Below, piece by piece: positions 1 to 34,063 of a DNA stretch of 64,000 nt. Made by a program: the position numbers and the translations under genes. The notes beneath the pieces are model-generated. The model was not told the DNA's origin. It made no database searches and saw only the letters and a list, made by a program, of their open reading frames with translations. The DNA is from Bispira polyomma. Taxonomy: Eukaryota. The stretch covers positions 11,594,001 through 11,658,000 of the forward strand of contig OZ287753.1 of assembly GCA_965649765.1 (NCBI GenBank), written 5' to 3'. Every line of letters begins with the position of its first letter. Position 1 is the first letter of the stretch.

Positions 1-298
1 TGAAAAACATTCAACTTAATTCTTAATTGTCTTTTAATCGCTGTAGTGTTTATGCTACAATGTACACCTTTATACAAGTAAAAACAAAGAAAGGGAAATG
101 TTCTTCAGTTATTTCTTTCAAATGAATAATTTACTTTGATAATATATTTTAACTGATTTTTTTTTGATTATTGGACTATTTAATGAACTATATATTGATT
201 AATCCTAGAATGCCAAGCAGTATCTTGTGAGGGATTATTTTTTCCAGCAAAACGATGTGTGTCGTATGGACATGATAACCAATAAACACATAAATTAC

Positions 299-493
299 CC
301 AGCATTCCTGGTTCTCCGTATACTTCAGCAGTAGTTCCTGGAGCTTTTCTCCAACACCTCCCTTTTTCCCAAATTTCTCCACGAGATCTCGCGTTTTCTC
401 GTACTGGTCTCGTGGCAGCACAGCCTGGATGGTCAGCAGGTACTTGTCCAGGGTATCAGTGAGTTTGGGTACAGGCAGCTTGGGTAGGCCGGC
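299..493 (-). CDS. ChAT: Choline O-acetyltransferase, coding exon 3 (65 aa, phase 0-0); gene continues beyond left edge
   Basis: Encodes AGLPKLPVPKLTDTLDKYLLTIQAVLPRDQYEKTRDLVEKFGKKGGVGEKLQELLLKYTENQECW, the LPxLPVPxL start of the choline/carnitine acyltransferase domain. Bounded by tttacag| (AG at 495-494) and |gtaatt (GT at 298-297). Same strand as and downstream of VAChT, which favours ChAT over a carnitine acyltransferase. Confidence 0.92.
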
Positions 494-888
494 CTGTAAA
501 GTACACAGGTGTGACTGTGATATAGAAAACAACAGCATATAAAAAGGTCAGCAGGTACTTGTCAAGGGTATCAGTGAGTTTGGGTACAGGGAGCTTGGGT
601 AGGCCAGCCTGTAAAGTACACAGGTGTGACTGTGATATAGAAAACAACAGCATATAGAAAGGTCAGCAGGTACTTGTCTAGGGTATCAGTGAGTTTGGGT
701 ACAGGGAGCTTGGGTAGGCCAGCCTGTAAAGTACACAGGTGTGACTGTGATATAGAAAACAACAGCATATAGAAAGGTCAGCAGGTACTTGTCTAGGGTA
801 TCAGTGAGTTTGGGTACAGGGAGCTTGGGTAGGCCAGTTTGTAAAGTACACAGGTGTAACTGTGATATAGAAAACAACAGCATATAGA
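431..888. repeat. Tandem repeat, 4 x 115 bp, each unit = 52 nt intron end with acceptor + first 63 nt of ChAT exon 3
   Basis: Units start at 431, 546, 661 and 776 and are near-identical. Acceptor CAG is intact at 494-496, 609-611 and 724-726 and mutated to CAA at 839-841. Confidence 0.97.
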
Positions 889-2580: not shown

Positions 2581-4160
2581 TGCAAATATTGTGCACAAAA
2601 CGGTCTCGCAAAAGGCTGTCAAACCCATTGTGCACAAAATGGTGTTGTGAAAGGCTGTCACACGCGAACGGTTCATGATCTGTTAACTGGAGTAAATGAA
2701 AAATAAAGTTTTTGTGATAATTAGTTTGTTGTCAATATTTTTTTTTATTGATGAAAATGAAAAAAAAAAATGAGAAGATTGTTAATTGTTAAATAATAAT
2801 TCAAATTGTGATTTCTGAATTGCAGCTAACATCTCAAAACCTTAAGACATAACCCATAGATAAACCTCTAAATATTCTTGGTTAATATTGAATCTAATCC
2901 TGTTAAAAGGTTGACCTTTCTTCCAAAACAGTGCAAGAAATGCTGAAGCAAAACCAACCCATAGGCAGCCAGGGAGAATAGATTATTTGTCACAATTTTC
3001 TGCTGTCAAAAGCCACAGACAACTAAAGCAAATGGGTGAAATACTTCAGGTTTTCTCCCCCCCCCCAGAAAATGTCATCTTTATTGATAAAGCAAGCAAT
3101 GAATTGAGGTCAAGGGAGCATGCTTTCTTTCAAGGGGGGAACATGCTTTATTTTCCGGCCTTACCATTTCTGGAATTGTCTTCATCGATTCTTGCAGTTC
3201 ATTTAAGATTGTCGGGCGATAATAACACATTCTACCAAAAAAAAAAAAAAAAAAAAAACTCTATGGAGAAAAGAACTCCATCTAAGATTTTAGCAATTTT
3301 TTTGAAACAAAATTGTCAATAATATTTTACCAAAGGGAAATATACCATCAATTGGTAACCTCTTTTTGTATGCTGGTCTTTTAATTTTATTTTTTAAGTG
3401 AAGAAAATCTTGGTAGCAGGGGTAACAAGGGAAGGAGAAAAAGTTTATTTTTCTTTGAGGTTAAGCTTAATCCAAAAGCCGTGACAGTGTGGGAAGAGGC
3501 TCTAGGCTTTTTGTCATAATTCAGGCTAGGTCCTGGGGACTCTCTGGAGAACATTCTTGATACAAGGGAGATAAGAGGCTGAATATTCAATTTATTTCCT
3601 ACATTTACGCCCACGTGTCGTAGTGGCTTTTTGTGACTTTATGGTGTCTTTCTTAATATGCTGAAGGGAGAAAACATAACCGGTTATTATGTCGTCAAAT
3701 AAAAAAACCCAGGATTGTTTAGTTTATAGGTTTAATTCATTTGTTGAGTAGTCATTTTGAGTAATTATATGTGTGCTCTTATATTCACACTTAAGATTTT
3801 GCTAAAAATATTAAAGAATAAATAGAAAACAATACAACATGGGGTTACTTTTTGACATTAAGTGGCACCTACTTTTGGCGGGTCTGAGGAAGTCACTTGA
3901 GTCATAAACCAGACGACATTTGGGAGAGGAAGGGCATTACAACAAACCAGACTGCTTTCTGGTAGATCACCATGGGCGATAATGGGATAATTCTAATTGT
4001 TTTGCTTTTGCATTTTTTTGGTTATGAATTATATGCAATGCACAAACTAGATTTTTTTTGGGAGAAATGGAATGTGTATTTGTGTGAATATTACTTTGAG
4101 GTTAAAGTTTAGAAATACAGATATAATAATGAAATACATGTTGATTACTTAAACCTTTAA

Positions 4161-5577: not shown

Positions 5578-6320
5578 AAAACAAGAGCTGTCTTTTTAAA
5601 AAGACACAGCCGGACATATCATGAAATACACACATTCATGGATATGGCCACTATTTATACCCAGGCAATTCTGACACCCCCCCTCCCCTCACTTTGGACA
5701 TGTCGATTGATTTTAACCAGTCTATGAAAGGCCTTATGTGCCAGTCCCACCGGATTTACGTTAGGATATATAAGTCAAGCATGGCCTTATAAAATATTTG
5801 ATGCAAAACATGCAAAACTAGAAATTAGCGATTTTCTCCACGTTGAAGGCTTTAACAGAGGTTGAAATTCATGTATTAGTACTTCAAAAGCCTTAAAGTC
5901 TCACAGGGGATGGATAAGTTCATGTCCAAGTATGTATTTAAACCCCCGTATGACATGTATGAGTACGCCAATACACGTAAAAGGACGTCATAATGATGCA
6001 CATTTACACACTGTGACGCATATCCACGTTTCAGTACGTCATACATTTGCATCTCTTGTGTGTCCAAATTTCAAACAGTTTAAAATTATAAATTTCTGGC
6101 ATCTCATCTCTCACCCCAGGTTATGTATGTTTATGTATATTACGTTAACTCCTGCATACTCCATGCAAACCCTACGCAAATACATTTTCTAATGACTCCT
6201 AACATAACATGGCCGGTGGGACCAGGACATTACATATTATTTCTAAGATGGCGGTACCCTTTCCAACATGGCGGCACCTTTTTCAGAATGAAAACAACAT
6301 CAGGTAGTACCTGATACAAA
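5578..6320 (+). mobile_element. Non-autonomous element starting AAACAAGAG and ending in a short stem-loop (Helentron/HINE-like)
   Basis: Shares aaacaagag.tgtctt, atatggccacta and cagaatgaaaacaa..tcagg.....cctga blocks with 29641-29850 (-) and 39258-39480 (+). Confidence 0.6.
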
Positions 6321-6937
6321 GGGCGAGAGTACTTTTATACCCACACCCCAAAGACATGTATACATGTCACTCCTTTTTGTGAGACCCACCCTAAAACTTG
6401 GACAATGGGGATGTGTTGGGGATGCAAATTGCTGGCCTTACTTTAGCTCCCATTTAAACATAAATATGTATTTAATGTGTGTACACTATACAATATCTAA
6501 GCTATTTTATTACCATAGTAGAATATTTATTCTAAACTTAAGAGAAGAAATTGTTACTCCACAAACGTGTCATCTACCTGTAATTGTTTTACATAATAGT
6601 TTTGGCCAGTTCAGTGACATATTGTATTGTATTTTGTATTTTTAATTCGCCTTATTGACGATGAGGTATCGTCTGGAGTGCAACAATATAATCAATTGAT
6701 CAATTGAGAAGTCCATAAGTCATTAGTAGCCAAGGTCTGTAAAGAAATGATGTGGGGGTGTACAGGGAAGTGAACAAACTGTGTAGGTAGAGGAGGCATC
6801 AGCAGTGTAGAGATAACACTTCCCACCTCCACAATAAGGGGTTCGATTCTCAGCTGTAGCATGTAGTATATGTAGAAAATTTGCAAGTAGACTATTATTT
6901 AATTTAAAGCTCAATATAAATCTAAACGAAAATATAT

Positions 6938-7400
6938 ATGAATAGAACTGAACTGTCTGTTAGAAGAAGTTTTGTAATGATAAGGATTTTTGAACAATGT
7001 TTAGGTTTGAGGAGCAACATTGAAAAATCCCTAACATTTGGGAAGAATACAGACATTTGTACAGATTTGAACATGCAATGGGTGAAACAATTTACCTTGT
7101 CAGGAATACACTTTGATACAAACTTGGTAAATATGGTTCATCTCAATTACACATATAAAATCTTAGAAATAGAAAAGGTTTTCTCAGCATTTAAGAAGCA
7201 TAAGCTAAGTATAATAGGGAAAGTAACAGTAGTAAAGACCTTGGGCATACCAAAATTAATCAATGTTTTAACTGTGTTACCTTAACGAAACGGTGAAATA
7301 TTGCAGAATATAGAAAAATGTTGATAAAGAATTTATTTGGAACAATAATGTTTTAAACGAAAATATTTTATAGAGCCATTGACCAGGCTATGAAGATGTT
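6938..7400 (+). pseudogene. L1/Tx1-type LINE ORF2 fragment (post-RT region)
   Basis: LSGIHF...KLSIIGKVTVVKTLGIPKLINVLTVLP motif typical of Tx1/L1 ORF2, followed by stops and frameshifts. Confidence 0.75.
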
Positions 7401-9875
7401 GCATGACTTCAAAGCACTAATCTCATTCTAAAGTAGCCCTTTTATGCCAATCCTCCAACCTCACGCCATTTACCAAGATCTCGTGAGACTTGACCCCCAT
7501 CCTCTCCCGATTTGCAAGTCAGTGACAGGGTTAAGTAGAGTCATTCTCATCATGGGGGCAAATACTAGGTCATACACTCTGTGTGTGTATTGCAGTATCC
7601 GAGTGGCGATTTCCATTAATTTTGTACCTTTAGTCAAATACGATTTCATTAAGTTAGCGATCATATGTAAAGCAAAGACAAACAGCCAATCAAATTACAG
7701 CATCTACATTAAGTACAAAATGTTCCCAGTTGTTTCGGTGAAAACTTAGTGCTCCACGAAAAGTTTCAAAGTGGCTAATCAAATAAACAATGCACTCAAC
7801 GGCTAAAAAATAATTCTCAAAGGTTTGCCACTCGAATAAACAGTATGTCTGTATGTTTCTCTACGTTCCTGTCTGTGTAGATCTCTGTGTGAAACTATGC
7901 CTGTATGTGTACGTGTATAAGTGTAAGATCTATTAACGGTTCCAAATTGATGACATTACTGCGCATGTCTAATATGAACTTTCACCTTAATCACTCCCTC
8001 AAAACCAAAAATAAATGGCATTTAAAAAAATATTTGTGTTTCTAACAGTCAAATTTTAAAGACACTTATCAGGTATTCTTATAATAATTAGCTATTAAAT
8101 ATTATACCCATTGACCCCTTAACTGTTAAAAGATCCATGTGTTAATGTTAATAAAGCATAAGCGGTGGGGTGGTCTGTGGCTAAAACTTAAACTTCCATT
8201 AATTTAGAAATATTGCCTTTATACATTATAAGACTGTATATAAAATAGCTTGCAGCCACAAAAAATATTGTATGAGTAGAATGTACATAAATGAATCAGG
8301 TACATTATAGGAATCGTAGTAGGAGTTTTAAAGGCCAGCTTGGGATATATATATACTTGACCAACATAATATATTGCACAAATTAACAGTTTTTAGCTGA
8401 AACAAAAAAAAAAAAAAAAAATTACAATTAAGTTTGAATATTAGATAATTTTGTGCATATACAGATAAAGATTTTCACTATGAATTAATTTTCATTATTT
8501 AAGCTCACCGTCTGAAATATCTAAACATAAATAAAGACATTAGTAAGTTACAGCCGGTATTGTTCACTTAAAAAGGTATGCATATCTAGACTATAACCAT
8601 TGTTGATGAATTCATTGAATGGATCTATGTAATCTTTGTGTGACGTCACGCTGGTCCTATTTATCCTTAGACTGGTGAGAGATGAGGAGGTGGGGGAGGG
8701 GGGGATCTAGGGGAGGGGGTGTAGTCTTCGGTGGATTAAGACGTGATCCAGTTAACCCCCAGGGGTGGTGTGGGGGGTAGGCTGAAGCTTATTATTAAAC
8801 CTAATTCACGCAAGTCCTATGAGAGGCAGCTGGTAATGTGTCTGTTTGTCAGAGGCTGGGAGCTCTTTTCATGTTAGCCAGACTTTTAATAGACGCAAAA
8901 AGACCAATCTAGCATCAAAACCAAAGATACCAGGGGGGAGAGGCGTTATTTCCTGATATATGTATTGTTTTCGAATAAATGATACTCATGATACCCGATC
9001 TACAGCAAATAACTAACAAACTTTCCCACATGTAGGAACAAACTGTAAAAAGTCCACTGTAAAAGTGGTTGTATTTTTGAAACGAAGCATGGGATAATTG
9101 GGTACATTAATGAATGAAAATTGAAGATATATTATGGTATTATTTGTTTAAAGTTATTTCCTGTAAAAAAATAATATTTTAGGGTAAAGTATTTTTTTAT
9201 CGCTCACTTCTCCCATTTGTAAATAATTGACATTATTGTCAACTGAAATGACCAGCCACATGTAAGAGAGCGACAATGAAAGAATTTTATGCAAAATAGG
9301 TTGGCTATCATCGTAGAGAGCACCGAGAAGTACCGACTTCCATATAAGGAAATATATTTGTTTTTGGCAAACGACTCGGTCTGAACCGCCAACGATGTGC
9401 TACATATTGTTGTATTGACAATGGAAATGACAGGAGGCCACGTATATGAGTAAGTTATTAGTGCTTTATTTATTATGTTAAATGTACGCATCTTATAAAA
9501 TAGGTTAGTATTGATTTAAAAGTTGTCTTTGCGATAATATATTGATATATCGCCAATTATGTACGTGACAGACTTCAGTTCTTTTCTTCGTCAATTTCCG
9601 TTTGTCTTTGGTTCAAAACATGACACAGAATGAAACTTCCATGATGCCGATAATATCTACTTGCCGATAATACCTCGCAAGGCAGTATATATATACATCT
9701 AGACTATCACTGGTGGTAAACTGGTAAAACCAATTTTCTGGTGACTTGGAAAAGGAAGAGTGAATGGTATAGTAATTCTGATATCTTGGAGACCATGAGT
9801 TCCAGAAGGTTGAATACTTACCCTTACTCCACTATGAGGAAGAGGGTGTTGTGACGGTATCTTTTTTGCCTTTTA

Positions 9876-11096: not shown

Positions 11097-12554
11097 AGAG
11101 AGGGTTGTTTGTTGGGAGGGGTGGAAACAATTGTGCTTGTTATTTCATATTTTCTCATGGAAAATCTATGTGGGAAGAAGAGTCTCTTTGAGAAAACTGC
11201 TTATTTTTGAAAAGGGGTGGTTTCTCAAAAACCAACTAGAGATAGAATTTACCAAGAAAGGATTCTTTACCACATTTAGTTTTTATGTCAAACTAATATT
11301 GATTTCCCTTCAAATAAGATAAAACTTGTGTTTTTTCCCTCAAGTTCAAAATAACACATTTTACAATGTTACTGTATACATGATGCCAATATACAAATAG
11401 TTCTATTTTTACAAGGGAAGAAAATGATCTAGCTATAGATTTATGTTGGTAAATACAGCTAGTGCTGTATATTCTCCAGAAAGAAACTTTGAAAACTCAA
11501 ATTCACACACAACTCTCAAATGGAAGATTATATGTGGAAAGTTCTTAGATATGGAAATAACCATTTCTTGTTTGACCATTCAGTACTGGATTAATATATC
11601 CTGTCATATTTGATGTAAAATCACTCCAGCCAGAGATTTTGGGCTTTTGAATAGGAACTCAAATATAGACTTACCTTTCCGATGAAGGACCATATCTGGA
11701 AAGTCCTTATATATGGAAATAACCTGTACTTGTAACCATTCAATATAGTAGAGCTTTTATTGCTGAATTCAAATATGGAGTCACATTTAATGTAATATCA
11801 CTCCAGCTAGACATTTTTGGGTTTTTAAATCTTAAGTCCAGAAATTGCGATTTTTTTTGTGGAGAATACGAACACCCTGGTTTTATAGGGATTGTCCAGG
11901 AGGGAGGGGAATGGGGGACTTAGACAAAGGGGGGCAGGGGGGGGGCAGAAAGCTATATGGGGAGAAAATTGGTAGTAATGTCATTGTCTTATCAAACCGC
12001 CTGTCCCATCTAATCAGGCTTGGAAGTCTATAGGGGAGATACATTTACCCCCCCCCCTCCCCCCACCAACACACACCCCCAAACAAATAACCGCATCCTA
12101 AATCTGATGGTCTGGCAGCCTTTCTGCAGATGGGTGAAAGATAGGGATAGGAATCACTTAAGTGAGGTTCACACTGAGGTTCATACTATGACGGTATTGG
12201 AGGCGGTAAGGGAAGTTTTTAAAAATCATCTTGTAGCATGGCAAACCCTATCTATAACTTTCCCTAAGTTTGGCTTACTTCCTGAACCTTTTTCAGTCAG
12301 CTGTGCGAGGCAGAAGTTTTGAATAAGTTTCACTCCATATCTTCACCTAGATGGATCAGCCGGTATGAGAGGCGGAAATACAAGTTATAATACATTCTAG
12401 TACCTATTGATATCACCTAATACCGCCGACCATACCGCTAAAATGTGAACAGGGCATTAGAACAAGGGAGTACTGTATATGTACAATGGGACGTTATTAT
12501 AGAATTCTTGGGTGCATTTATATACAGAACTACCACTTAATGGTGTTTATAAGA

Positions 12555-32392: not shown

Positions 32393-34063
32393 CTAGTGGT
32401 ATGCCTTAAAGTCAGAGTCAGAGTCTTGGTCAGTTGATTGCCTTTTGTAAGAGATGCGCGTTGGTTCCGTTTCACTGGCATACAGAGGGTGAGTGGCTTC
32501 CTTGTGAATGTGCCCGTTCTCCATTCCCGGCTTGTCACCATTCATGTGGTTCATGGCGTAAGTTTTATACTTGAAGTCGGGATCGTTGCCCTCCACTAGT
32601 GTGCTCTCTTCGTTCTCAAAAGGTTTGTACTTGTAGACGTTCCTTAGCAGAGCCATGATGGGGGCGTACAACATGTTGGTGACAAAGATGCCAACGTTGA
32701 GCCAGAGAAATCCTATGGACACCACAACGCTTCCCGCGAGGACCGGGCCGAAGGCGTAGGCCAGGCAGTAGGAGATGTCCGCTATTGCATAGACGCTTCC
32801 ATAGACAGAAGTGTGCCTCACATCTACCAGGTAGCCCAGGGTGGGCAGGACAGCAGTATCTACCAAGGCTATACCGAAGCAATCGATCATCAGTGGCACA
32901 ATGACGGCGCCATACGTTTTACAGAATGGGACGATGAGGCAGCTGAGGCCCTCCAAACCTAAGCCAACAGCAGTGAAGAGCCACTGCTTGGTGGGGTACA
33001 TCTTGCAAAGTTTCACAGTTACATACACCCCCAGCACATGCGGGAAGAAGGCGGGCAGCCAGACAACTCCAATCTCCCATTCAGTGGCGTTCATCGTTTC
33101 CTTCATCCAAATCGCAATGGTCGGCTCTAAGAAGGCTAGCGATAAGTTGGCCATCACTAGAGCACCAGCACAGATGGCAATGTATGGATCTAGGATTAGC
33201 CGGTAGATAGGGGTACCCTTAGGAGCCTCTCCGGCGGCCTTCATCATGTTCCTCTCTTTTCGTACCGGATTCATCACCATCAAGAGCATCACACCGTCCA
33301 ACAATGCAATAAAAGCCAGGACCAAAAACGGGAGGGATTTTCCAGCCACTTCATACATCAAGCCACCAAATGGAGGGGCAAAGAGACTTCCGAAGGATAT
33401 AAAGGCCAATGCAATGGCCATGGCTTTCTGCCTTCCATTTTCTTCCGAATATCTGTCGGCTATCATGGCAAGTCCAGCTGTGTCTGCGAAGGCCGATCCA
33501 AGGCCTTGCAGACTGCGCGCTGCAAAGAGTACAGCATAACTTTGGCCAAAGGCGAAGATGGCAGTAGAGAAAAAGAGGATTGATAAACCTATCACCATGG
33601 GGATCTCATAGCCCACTTTGTCTATCACTGATCCAGAGATCGGGTTCACGAGGAGTTGGACTATGGCTTTGGATGCAAACAACATACCTACACTGGCATC
33701 CTCATTCCGGTTACCATGGTAAACCACCAGAGGAAACAGATGGTTCAGGTGTTTCTTCAGAGTTTCATTGGACTGGGAGAGGTGGTACAACTCCCCAAAG
33801 GTATAGTTGGTGGTCAAGTTTCCTCCCCAGTCAATTTCCACATGATGGTCATCCGGTGGAGGGGCCGAACCCCATTGGTTGATGTCTCGCAAGTACACAG
33901 GTATAATCGGCACGATGACCATGTAAAGCATGTTGTCGAGGAGTAAAGCTATGCTTACGATCACCAACACAAGGCGGCGCTGCGTGTCGGGATTGGTGAT
34001 TTTCTCGTGCCACTTCTCCCTTAACTGTTGCATATCCATGTTTAAAAATGGTATCACCGGCAT
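32393..34063 (-). CDS. SLC18A3: Vesicular acetylcholine transporter (VAChT, unc-17 orthologue), 556 aa, intronless ORF
   Basis: MFS/SLC18 protein with about 12 hydrophobic segments and VAChT-type motifs ALLLDNMLYMVIVPIIP, AFLEPT, WLPAFFPH, ALVDTAVLPTL and YGSVYAIADISY. In-frame TAG 15 nt upstream of the ATG. Confidence 0.97.
   Translation of the reverse strand: MPVIPFLNMDMQQLREKWHEKITNPDTQRRLVLVIVSIALLLDNMLYMVIVPIIPVYLRDINQWGSAPPPDDHHVEIDWGGNLTTNYTFGELYHLSQSNETLKKHLNHLFPLVVYHGNRNEDASVGMLFASKAIVQLLVNPISGSVIDKVGYEIPMVIGLSILFFSTAIFAFGQSYAVLFAARSLQGLGSAFADTAGLAMIADRYSEENGRQKAMAIALAFISFGSLFAPPFGGLMYEVAGKSLPFLVLAFIALLDGVMLLMVMNPVRKERNMMKAAGEAPKGTPIYRLILDPYIAICAGALVMANLSLAFLEPTIAIWMKETMNATEWEIGVVWLPAFFPHVLGVYVTVKLCKMYPTKQWLFTAVGLGLEGLSCLIVPFCKTYGAVIVPLMIDCFGIALVDTAVLPTLGYLVDVRHTSVYGSVYAIADISYCLAYAFGPVLAGSVVVSIGFLWLNVGIFVTNMLYAPIMALLRNVYKYKPFENEESTLVEGNDPDFKYKTYAMNHMNGDKPGMENGHIHKEATHPLYASETEPTRISYKRQSTDQDSDSDFKAYH

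What the first reader, a model, noticed from the sequence alone, without database searches (positions are those of the whole stretch)
431..888. ChAT exon 3 acceptor is quadruplicated: two intact decoy 3' splice sites precede the productive one
Seen: four 115-bp units each carry the intron end plus the first 21 codons (AGLPKLPVPKLTDTLDKYLLT). In transcript order the first unit has lost its AG (CAA, 839-841), the next two keep an identical tttacag|G (724, 609), and only the last (494) continues into the full exon. Either decoy reads on to ...FLYAVVFYITVTPVYFTG..TQTH* and stops. Inference: the spliceosome must skip two acceptors of equal strength, perhaps via enhancers in 299-430, or some ChAT mRNA goes to nonsense-mediated decay. 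If copy number varies, this VNTR could tune ChAT output independently of VAChT.
Basis: partly seen in the sequence, partly recalled or inferred. Interest (0 to 1): 0.8.

Follow-up and report, generated by a model that had tools for sequence, protein, structure and literature searches.

The report
Splice-junction minisatellite in annelid ChAT gene
The start of a choline acetyltransferase exon, with the end of the intron before it, really is repeated four times in tandem, but this is one of many such junction repeats in this worm genome (a type known from amphioxus as "mirages") and nothing shows that it regulates the gene.

Summary
Window 431-888 holds 4.0 tandem copies of a 115-bp unit (97% identity). 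On the minus strand each unit is the last 52 nt of an intron plus the first 63 nt (21 codons) of the first acyltransferase exon of ChAT. The copy furthest upstream in the transcript has lost its AG. The next two keep an acceptor identical to the productive one, and using either gives a stop after 50 codons.

The regulatory reading is not supported.
- ChAT alone has at least six arrays that straddle an exon end, plus one displaced copy of a donor junction.
- Eight paralogous acyltransferase genes have 13 more.
- Arrays straddle exon ends more often than random placement predicts (P about 1e-4 in the paralogs, about 1e-5 in ChAT).
- A related annelid (VAChT 93% identical) has a single copy of this junction and no arrays at the 18 ChAT exon ends compared.

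This is therefore a young, lineage-specific junction minisatellite. It matches the amphioxus "mirages" and the human F7 intron-7 VNTR, where the extra sites stay silent.

No RNA data could be found, so use of the decoy acceptors is untested. Short-read contigs of three runs break exactly where the array predicts, so an assembly artefact is unlikely. Other first-reader notes of this scan report the same pattern elsewhere in this genome.

The parts
431..888 (-). Tandem array of 4 x 115 bp. Each unit is 52 nt of intron tail plus the first 63 nt of the exon. Units on the plus strand: 431-545 (unit 4, productive), 546-660 (unit 3), 661-775 (unit 2), 776-888/890 (unit 1).
   Evidence: TRF; alignment; per-unit differences; unique in the genome.
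296..493 (-). Productive ChAT exon (66 codons, AGLPKLPVP...ENQECW), phase 0. The donor GT follows at 295-294.
   Evidence: Translation; Pfam Carn_acyltransf positions 1-61, E 2.9e-14; best PDB match is ChAT; ortholog in the relative.
494..495 (-). AG of the productive acceptor. It is the exon-proximal one and the last in transcript order.
609..610 (-). AG of the decoy acceptor in unit 3. Its -20..+2 sequence is identical to the productive site. Its use adds 115 nt and gives a stop after 50 codons.
724..725 (-). AG of the decoy acceptor in unit 2. Its use adds 230 nt and gives a stop after 50 codons.
838..840 (-). Dead acceptor of unit 1. It reads caa|A instead of cag|G. It keeps the +1 A seen in the relative (cag|ACT), so the AG was lost by one G-to-A change.
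17787..17900 (-). Upstream ChAT exon with the start codon (ATG 17885-17883, 33 codons, phase 0). The donor GT is at 17786-17785. This exon is spliced to exon 296-493 across a 17.3-kb intron.
   Evidence: conserved ortholog with a single acceptor in the relative.
17879..18046 (-). Second junction array of 2.7 x 63 bp, covering the acceptor and first about 20 nt of the ATG exon. A short 21-bp array lies beside it at 18065-18125.
   Evidence: TRF; sequence; absent in the relative.
32393..34063 (-). Single-exon VAChT ORF (556 aa), upstream of ChAT on the same strand. This is the cholinergic gene locus arrangement.

Best explanation
The array is a young, lineage-specific junction minisatellite of the 'mirage' type. 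A 115-bp segment spanning the intron/exon boundary of the first acyltransferase exon of ChAT was duplicated in tandem, probably by replication slippage or unequal exchange. First there were two copies. The upstream copy then lost its AG, and the downstream lineage, marked by G at exon position +1, expanded to three. Only the copy nearest the exon continues into the rest of the exon and its donor 198 nt downstream. I infer that this copy is chosen because a 3' splice site before a 17-kb intron is recognised together with the nearest downstream 5' splice site (exon definition). The decoys would define exons of 313 and 428 nt. The upstream copies are intronic passengers. If they are used at all, they yield frameshifted transcripts with a stop after 50 codons, which nonsense-mediated decay would be expected to remove. 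The array belongs to a genome-wide tendency of this annelid to build tandem arrays on exon-intron junctions. It is not a ChAT-specific control device. Shown here: the structure, the gene identity, the recency, the absence from a relative, the genome-wide pattern and the intact state of the decoys. Inferred: the duplication mechanism, the choice of acceptor and the silence of the decoys.
For: Structure and uniqueness.

The same architecture at other ChAT exon ends. Acceptor arrays lie at the ATG exon, at L002 7305-7549 and at L002 6692-6847. Donor arrays lie at L002 6152-6506 and 2211-2509. A displaced copy of a donor junction lies at L002 7680-7972.

Paralogs: 13 of 136 exon ends in eight genes carry such an array. 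Thirteen of 24 arrays of 80 bp or more straddle a junction, against 5.0 expected (P about 1e-4). In the ChAT 30 kb it is 6 of 9 against 0.73 expected (P about 1e-5).

Relative with 93% identical VAChT: a single copy of this junction and none of the ChAT arrays.

Decoy sites: 99 of 107 keep AG or GT, and the dinucleotide is not degraded faster than its flanks.

Reads: contigs of three short-read runs end at window 521 (= 491+30) and begin at 808 (= 838-30). That is exactly where k=31 graphs must branch if the unit-specific bases of units 4 and 1 flank shared repeat sequence. Word depth is about 1.5-2.4 times higher over units 2-3.

Literature: amphioxus mirages in Adh3, TnC, globin and PGBD5 duplicate splice sites without producing aberrant mRNA (PMC3087553, PMC3902484). 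The human F7 intron-7 VNTR spans the exon 7 donor, and its pseudo-sites are functional but silent (PMC1557585).
Against: There is no RNA evidence at all for this locus (one search found nothing). The two decoys match the productive acceptor over -52..+2, apart from one base at -49 in unit 4, and they share the first 63 exon nucleotides. A 5'-to-3' search from a branch point, or co-transcriptional 'first come' choice, would therefore favour them. Unit 1, the only unit with native intron sequence upstream, is the one that lost its AG; that could be a trace of selection against decoy use. RT-PCR in amphioxus could have missed transcripts removed by NMD. Copy number in individuals was not measured; the short-read contigs do not resolve the middle of the array.
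Confidence: 0.68

Rival explanations
1. One reading: the decoy acceptors are used at an appreciable rate, part of the ChAT pre-mRNA is diverted to frameshifted NMD substrates, and array copy number sets ChAT output independently of VAChT.
For: The decoys are identical in sequence to the productive site and lie upstream of it. Their use gives a premature stop. Unit 1 has lost its AG, which would be expected if decoy use is costly. Length variants of the analogous human F7 VNTR have been linked to factor VII level; I recall this and did not check it here.
Against: The same architecture occurs at about 10% of the exon ends sampled in unrelated genes, with up to 28 intact decoy acceptors before one exon. 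That would be very costly if decoys were used freely. Decoy AG/GT dinucleotides show no preferential decay. The array is absent from a related species. In amphioxus and in human F7 the extra sites are silent. No expression or copy-number data exist.
Confidence: 0.2
2. Assembly artefact: the genome has a single unit, and the assembler created the repeat.
For: Tandem repeats are a known source of assembly error. The three runs come from one study and may include the assembled individual.
Against: The units differ at unit-specific bases, 1 to 9 differences between pairs, which artefactual copies would not. Independent k=31 contigs from three runs break exactly at 491+30 and 838-30. They carry both the caa|A copy joined to the upstream intron and the cag|GCC copy joined to the exon. 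Depth is raised in between. Nineteen similar arrays occur elsewhere.
Confidence: 0.03
3. Junction arrays are kept because they do something useful. For example, repeated U2AF/U2 or U1 binding sites next to the real site could raise the local concentration of splicing factors, or protect long introns from premature cleavage.
For: Arrays are enriched at junctions. Counted per copy, decoy AG/GT dinucleotides are more conserved than their flanks: 4.2% against 12.4% mismatches.
Against: The conservation signal disappears when columns are counted instead of copies: 7/38 against 101/342, P 0.19. The arrays are absent from the relative, whose ChAT exons are otherwise conserved. No functional data exist.
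Confidence: 0.07

Closest known systems
[quoted passage not shown] 2002, as cited in PMC3087553 and PMC3902484)
   Same: A tandem array whose unit spans a splice junction. Both acceptor-side and donor-side forms exist. Units are tens to about 160 bp, with 2-6 or more copies. Most copies keep AG or GT. Several arrays can sit in one gene. The pattern looks like a general property of the genome. The BflGb6 globin case is a direct parallel: the 3' end of an intron plus the 5' part of an exon, in 3-6 units of 150-160 bp.
   Different: The host here is an annelid, not a cephalochordate, according to the VAChT tree. Normal splicing and length polymorphism, both shown in amphioxus, could not be tested here. 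I could not read the original 2002 paper, so the definition comes from later papers that cite it.
Human F7 intron 7 37-bp VNTR, whose first unit spans the exon 7 donor (PMC1557585)
   Same: A minisatellite seeded on a splice junction, giving several pseudo-sites identical to the authentic one. Only the exon-proximal site is used.
   Different: The F7 array is on the donor side, where the authentic site is also the first one met by 5'-to-3' scanning. Here the array is on the acceptor side and the authentic site is the last one, so scanning cannot explain the choice.
Intron gain or intron sliding by tandem duplication of a segment with an AG|GT proto-splice site (Rogers model; cases in PMC4974935 and PMC2891723)
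   Same: A local tandem duplication creates extra splice signals inside a gene.
   Different: Those duplications lie within exons and create a new intron. Here an existing junction is multiplied, and no new intron or exon is evident.
NAGNAG and other short-range tandem acceptors
   Same: Several acceptors compete for one exon.
   Different: NAGNAG sites are 3 nt apart, share one branch point and tract, and change the protein by one residue. Here whole 3' splice sites are 115 nt apart, and using another one shifts the frame.

Membership tests
Mirage-type junction minisatellite | Head-to-tail tandem repeat in the minisatellite size range | tested here: met
   Period 115, 4.0 copies, 97% identity, no indels.
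Mirage-type junction minisatellite | The repeat unit spans an exon-intron boundary and includes the splice signal | tested here: met
   Each unit has 52 nt of intron tail ending in cag (caa in unit 1) plus 63 nt of exon. The exon is verified by Pfam and by its ortholog.
Mirage-type junction minisatellite | Extra copies lie on the intron side, and the authentic site is the exon-proximal one | tested here: met
   All three extra copies lie upstream of the productive acceptor. The same geometry holds in all 11 acceptor arrays and 8 donor arrays examined. This partly follows from how the exons were defined.
Mirage-type junction minisatellite | Does not disturb normal splicing (RT-PCR in amphioxus) | not testable with these tools
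   No RNA run holds the locus. The protein word search with the exon found nothing.
Mirage-type junction minisatellite | Length instability or polymorphism between haplotypes | tested here: inconclusive
   Contigs of two samples are identical at the array edges but do not resolve its middle. A relative has one copy, which shows turnover between species only.
Mirage-type junction minisatellite | Recurs at many junctions of the same genome | tested here: met
   Six arrays straddle exon ends in ChAT, plus one displaced donor copy, and 13 occur in eight paralogs. Enrichment has P about 1e-4 and 1e-5.
Choline acetyltransferase (ChAT) within the cholinergic gene locus | Carn_acyltransf domain complete across the exons | tested here: met
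   Ten exon matches on C6 minus strand cover profile positions 1-573, except about 326-368.
Choline acetyltransferase (ChAT) within the cholinergic gene locus | Choline-type rather than carnitine-type substrate residues | tested here: met
   GRVDNIR and IDNHL match rat and human ChAT chains. Carnitine transferases have GRTDTIR/GRTETVR and FDRHL. E-values favour ChAT by 7-10 orders of magnitude for those exons. One other exon scores better with CrAT.
Choline acetyltransferase (ChAT) within the cholinergic gene locus | VAChT gene upstream on the same strand | tested here: met
   A 556-aa MFS ORF at 32393-34063 (minus strand) has named VAChT proteins as its best hits. A shared 5' non-coding exon was not looked for.
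   No population long-read or expression data were within reach. The only runs are k=31 contigs from one study.

The most novel reading that the evidence does not exclude
This annelid lineage has, or recently had, a process that seeds tandem duplications specifically on exon-intron junctions. About 10% of the exon ends sampled are affected, with up to 28 intact decoy sites at one exon, and a relative has none at the 18 ChAT exon ends compared. If the excess at junctions is mutational, for example breaks or template switching coupled to transcription, splicing or exon-positioned nucleosomes, rather than a product of selection or detection, it would be a new kind of mutational hotspot. The genome would then be a natural library of competing identical splice sites. 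It would also extend 'mirages' from cephalochordates to a protostome, which implies independent origin or a widespread overlooked phenomenon.
Probability: 0.3. Interest if true: 0.75.

Novelty: new member of a known kind. Interest (0 to 1): 0.42.

Why it matters
For ChAT itself the finding is probably of little consequence: the array looks like a tolerated passenger. The wider pattern has more value. Acceptor-side junction arrays place several sequence-identical 3' splice sites in front of the real one, so the usual sequence-based rules cannot explain the choice of site. A genome in which about one exon end in ten carries such an array, while a relative lacks them at the orthologous gene, is a ready-made system for testing exon definition against scanning. 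It could also be used to measure how much unproductive splicing a cell tolerates, and to watch junction duplications as raw material for intron gain or sliding. Gene predictors will also tend to mis-annotate exon starts and ends in this genome.

Tried and rejected
RNA evidence:
- The single run search returned only three DNA-like contig sets from one study and no RNA.
- A word search of the protein collection with the 66-aa exon found no candidate, so no transcript-derived fragment across the exon 2/3 junction could be recovered.

Copy number from reads: Logan contigs break inside the array, so they show only its edges and a raised word depth.

Selection against decoys: the per-copy count suggested that decoy AG/GT is more conserved than its flanks. 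This is pseudo-replication, and the column-level test is not significant. I therefore claim only that there is no preferential decay.

Naive enrichment: array coverage is flat at 7-10% over the first 700 nt of intron. The simple 'array within 15 nt of an exon end' rate (13/136) equals that coverage. Enrichment appears only when arrays are re-placed at random under the constraint that they may not duplicate more than one unit of exon.

Synonymous-only differences between units: three of the four variable exon columns are third codon positions. That has a chance probability of about 0.11, so it is not evidence that decoys are translated.

Other checks:
- Rfam found nothing in the window.
- The 20-bp x 26 array at 18908-19423 is not derived from a junction. 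It sits between inverted terminal repeats, like a foldback or MITE element.
- The original mirage paper (PMC117041) is not held.
- The N stretch inside 16263-16733 (420 N in the window) was left as it is.

Full report
**1. The observation**

TRF reports one array at window 431-888: period 115, 4.0 copies, 97% matches, no indels. On the minus strand each unit consists of the last 52 nt of an intron (ending tttacag) and the first 63 nt of an exon coding AGLPKLPVPKLTDTLDKYLLT.

Unit positions on the plus strand:

| Unit | Coordinates | Note |
|---|---|---|
| 4 | 431-545 | continues into the exon |
| 3 | 546-660 | decoy |
| 2 | 661-775 | decoy |
| 1 | 776-890 | AG lost |

Units 2 and 3 differ at one base. 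Unit 4 differs from them at four bases. The unit occurs nowhere else in the 1.035-Gb genome, so it is not a transposable element.

**2. The gene**

- Exon 296-493 matches the first 61 positions of Pfam Carn_acyltransf.
- Nine further exon matches follow on the same strand just outside the window, at C6:11585088-11593707.
- Two of these exons carry GRVDNIR and IDNHL, as in rat and human ChAT. Carnitine transferases have GRTDTIR/GRTETVR and FDRHL. The PDB E-values favour ChAT by 7-10 orders of magnitude. One other exon scores better with CrAT.
- A single-exon 556-aa VAChT ORF lies upstream on the same strand at 32393-34063. This is the classical cholinergic-locus arrangement.
- The exon with the start codon is 17787-17900, with its donor after 17787.
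- A VAChT tree places the genome among annelids, with moderate support.

**3. Is the array real DNA?**

Three runs from one study (two samples) hold 81% of the sampled words of 250-950. Their k=31 contigs match the assembly with no differences. They end at window 521 and resume at 808 (L004 position = window + 3600).

These are exactly 491+30 and 838-30. That is, each contig runs for k-1 bases past the last base specific to unit 4 and to unit 1 respectively. A de Bruijn graph must branch there only if the sequence in between is shared by several copies.

One contig joins the caa|A copy to the upstream intron, and another joins the cag|GCC copy to the exon. Word depth over units 2-3 is about 1.5-2.4 times that of the flanks. 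The units also differ from each other, which artefactual copies would not. I put the artefact reading at about 3%. The exact copy number in individuals remains unmeasured.

**4. The array is not alone**

The acceptor of the ATG exon is itself covered by a 63-bp x 2.7 array at 17879-18046. In the 10 kb downstream (L002), TRF finds arrays that abut exon ends:

| Place in L002 | Period x copies | Junction repeated |
|---|---|---|
| 7305-7549 | 53 x 4.8 | acceptor gtttttag\|TTCTTCT |
| 6692-6847 | 72 x 2.2 | acceptor plus the first 13 nt of the exon |
| 6152-6506 | 46 x 7.7 | end of that exon plus its donor |
| 2211-2509 | 50 x 6 | exon end plus CAG\|GTAAGG |
| 7680-7972 | 65 x 4.5 | copy of the donor junction of the exon at 8591-8767, displaced about 600 nt into the intron |

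ChAT thus has six arrays that straddle an exon end, plus one displaced junction copy.

To test generality independently of this locus, I fetched every exon match of eight paralogous acyltransferase genes with 700-nt flanks (109 kb in all).
- Thirteen of 136 exon ends carry an array that straddles the junction.
- Stacked by period, the units are plainly junction copies. One exon has 28 copies of a 41-bp acceptor unit. Another has 13 copies of a 62-bp donor unit. A third has a 115-bp x 6.8 acceptor array.

A naive coverage comparison shows no excess, because intron sequence near exons is 7-10% array throughout. I then re-placed the arrays at random, under the rule that they may not duplicate more than one unit of exon.
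- Paralogs: 13 of 24 arrays of 80 bp or more straddle a junction, against 5.0 expected (P about 1e-4).
- ChAT 30 kb: 6 of 9 against 0.73 expected (P about 1e-5).
- The ChAT figure is inflated by ascertainment, because the locus was chosen for its arrays. The paralog figure is not.

Other first-reader notes of this scan describe the same pattern in other windows of this genome. I treat those as leads that agree with my own test, not as evidence.

**5. Age and origin**

A related annelid assembly (ENA ERZ22147071; VAChT 93% identical) was walked from VAChT through ChAT.
- Its ATG exon has one acceptor and no array.
- All four of our units align to one single place in the relative. There the junction reads ccag|ACT and the intron tail is recognisably conserved.
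- Seven further ChAT exons were found in the relative, at 86-100% amino-acid identity. With exon 3 (83%) and the ATG exon that makes nine exons (18 ends), none with a junction array.

The arrays are therefore specific to our lineage. Unit 1 keeps the ancestral A at exon position +1 and lost its AG through one change. Units 2-4 share G at +1. The simplest history is one duplication, loss of the upstream AG, then expansion of the downstream copy to three. Unit identity ranges from 97% here to 73-88% in the other ChAT arrays, so the process has run over some time.

**6. Are decoys selected against?**

In 19 arrays I found 107 decoy junction copies, and 99 keep AG or GT. Counted per copy, the dinucleotide mismatches less often than its flanks (4.2% against 12.4%). 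Copies are not independent, though. Counted per column the difference is not significant (7/38 against 101/342, P 0.19). So there is no preferential decay of decoy sites. Exons preceded by up to 28 intact acceptors argue that the decoys are largely ignored.

**7. Mechanism**

Shown here:
- the decoys are equal to the productive site over -20..+2;
- they share the first 63 exon nucleotides with it;
- they differ from it only in what lies further downstream.

Inferred: with a 17.3-kb upstream intron, the 3' splice site is recognised together with the nearest downstream donor across the exon. The productive site defines a 198-nt exon, and the decoys would define 313-nt and 428-nt exons. Enhancers in the unique part (299-430) would also act best on the nearest acceptor.

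This agrees with the amphioxus mirages, where RT-PCR found regular splicing. It also agrees with human F7, where identical pseudo-donors are functional but silent. The acceptor-side case is the harder one, because 5'-to-3' scanning would pick a decoy first. Low-level decoy use hidden by NMD cannot be excluded.

**8. Comparison and verdict**

The structure meets the sequence-level features that define mirages: a tandem array, a unit spanning a junction, extra copies on the intron side, and recurrence across the genome. Normal splicing and length polymorphism could not be tested.

It is a new member of a known kind, in an annelid rather than a cephalochordate. I found no report of mirages outside amphioxus in four full-text searches. 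The idea that this array tunes ChAT output is unsupported.

The more interesting, still open question is why junctions are preferred sites for arrays in this lineage.

Noticed in passing
window 17879-18046 and 18065-18125: The acceptor, 5' UTR start and ATG of the upstream ChAT exon are repeated 2.7 times at 63-nt spacing. The relative has a single acceptor there.
   Followed up: partly
L002 (C6:11584001-11594000) 2211-2509, 6152-6506, 6692-6847, 7305-7549, 7680-7972: Five further arrays derived from junctions in the downstream ChAT exons. One of them is a copy of a donor junction displaced about 600 nt into its intron.
   Followed up: yes
L014 844-2083; L031 2284-3141; L024 1401-2264; L021 1934-2421: Paralogous acyltransferase genes on C9, C8 and C1 carry large junction arrays. 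Examples are 28 decoy acceptors of 41 bp, 13 decoy donors of 62 bp, and a 115-bp x 6.8 acceptor array.
   Followed up: yes
window 2981-3239, 3446-3618, 1856-2034, 11961-12050, 13404-13552, 15166-15285: Non-coding islands inside the 17-kb ChAT intron are conserved with the relative at 70-85% identity. The best (85% over 261 nt) is more conserved than the coding exons. All have stops in every frame. They are candidate cholinergic enhancers or other regulatory elements.
   Followed up: partly
window 18908-19423: A 20-bp x 26 minisatellite sits between inverted terminal repeats (gtataagcgcc...ggcgcttatac). It looks like a foldback or MITE element with an internal array, and it is not derived from a junction.
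   Followed up: partly
window about 1001-1400 (L004 4601-5000), and L004 1601-2000, 2401-2600, 3401-3600: k-mer depth rises to 1e4-1e6 in the short-read contigs, which marks very abundant interspersed repeats. One lies just upstream of the array. Loose-end consensus at L004 3432 resembles a tRNA-derived SINE head.
   Followed up: no
L008 17071-20183 and 18666-18719: In the relative, a retroelement (414-aa ORF plus an RVT_1 ORF) sits inside the ChAT gene. A partial second copy of one ChAT exon (18 aa, 83% identity) lies next to it.
   Followed up: no
G000 C2:65.79-66.01 Mb: A cluster of at least six tandem Carn_acyltransf paralogs lies on contig C2.
   Followed up: no
window about 897-905, upstream of the array: A TATTAAC motif, resembling a branch-point consensus, is conserved with the relative. 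It lies just outside the repeated unit, so it exists once, upstream of the dead unit 1. The productive acceptor must therefore use a branch point inside the array.
   Followed up: no
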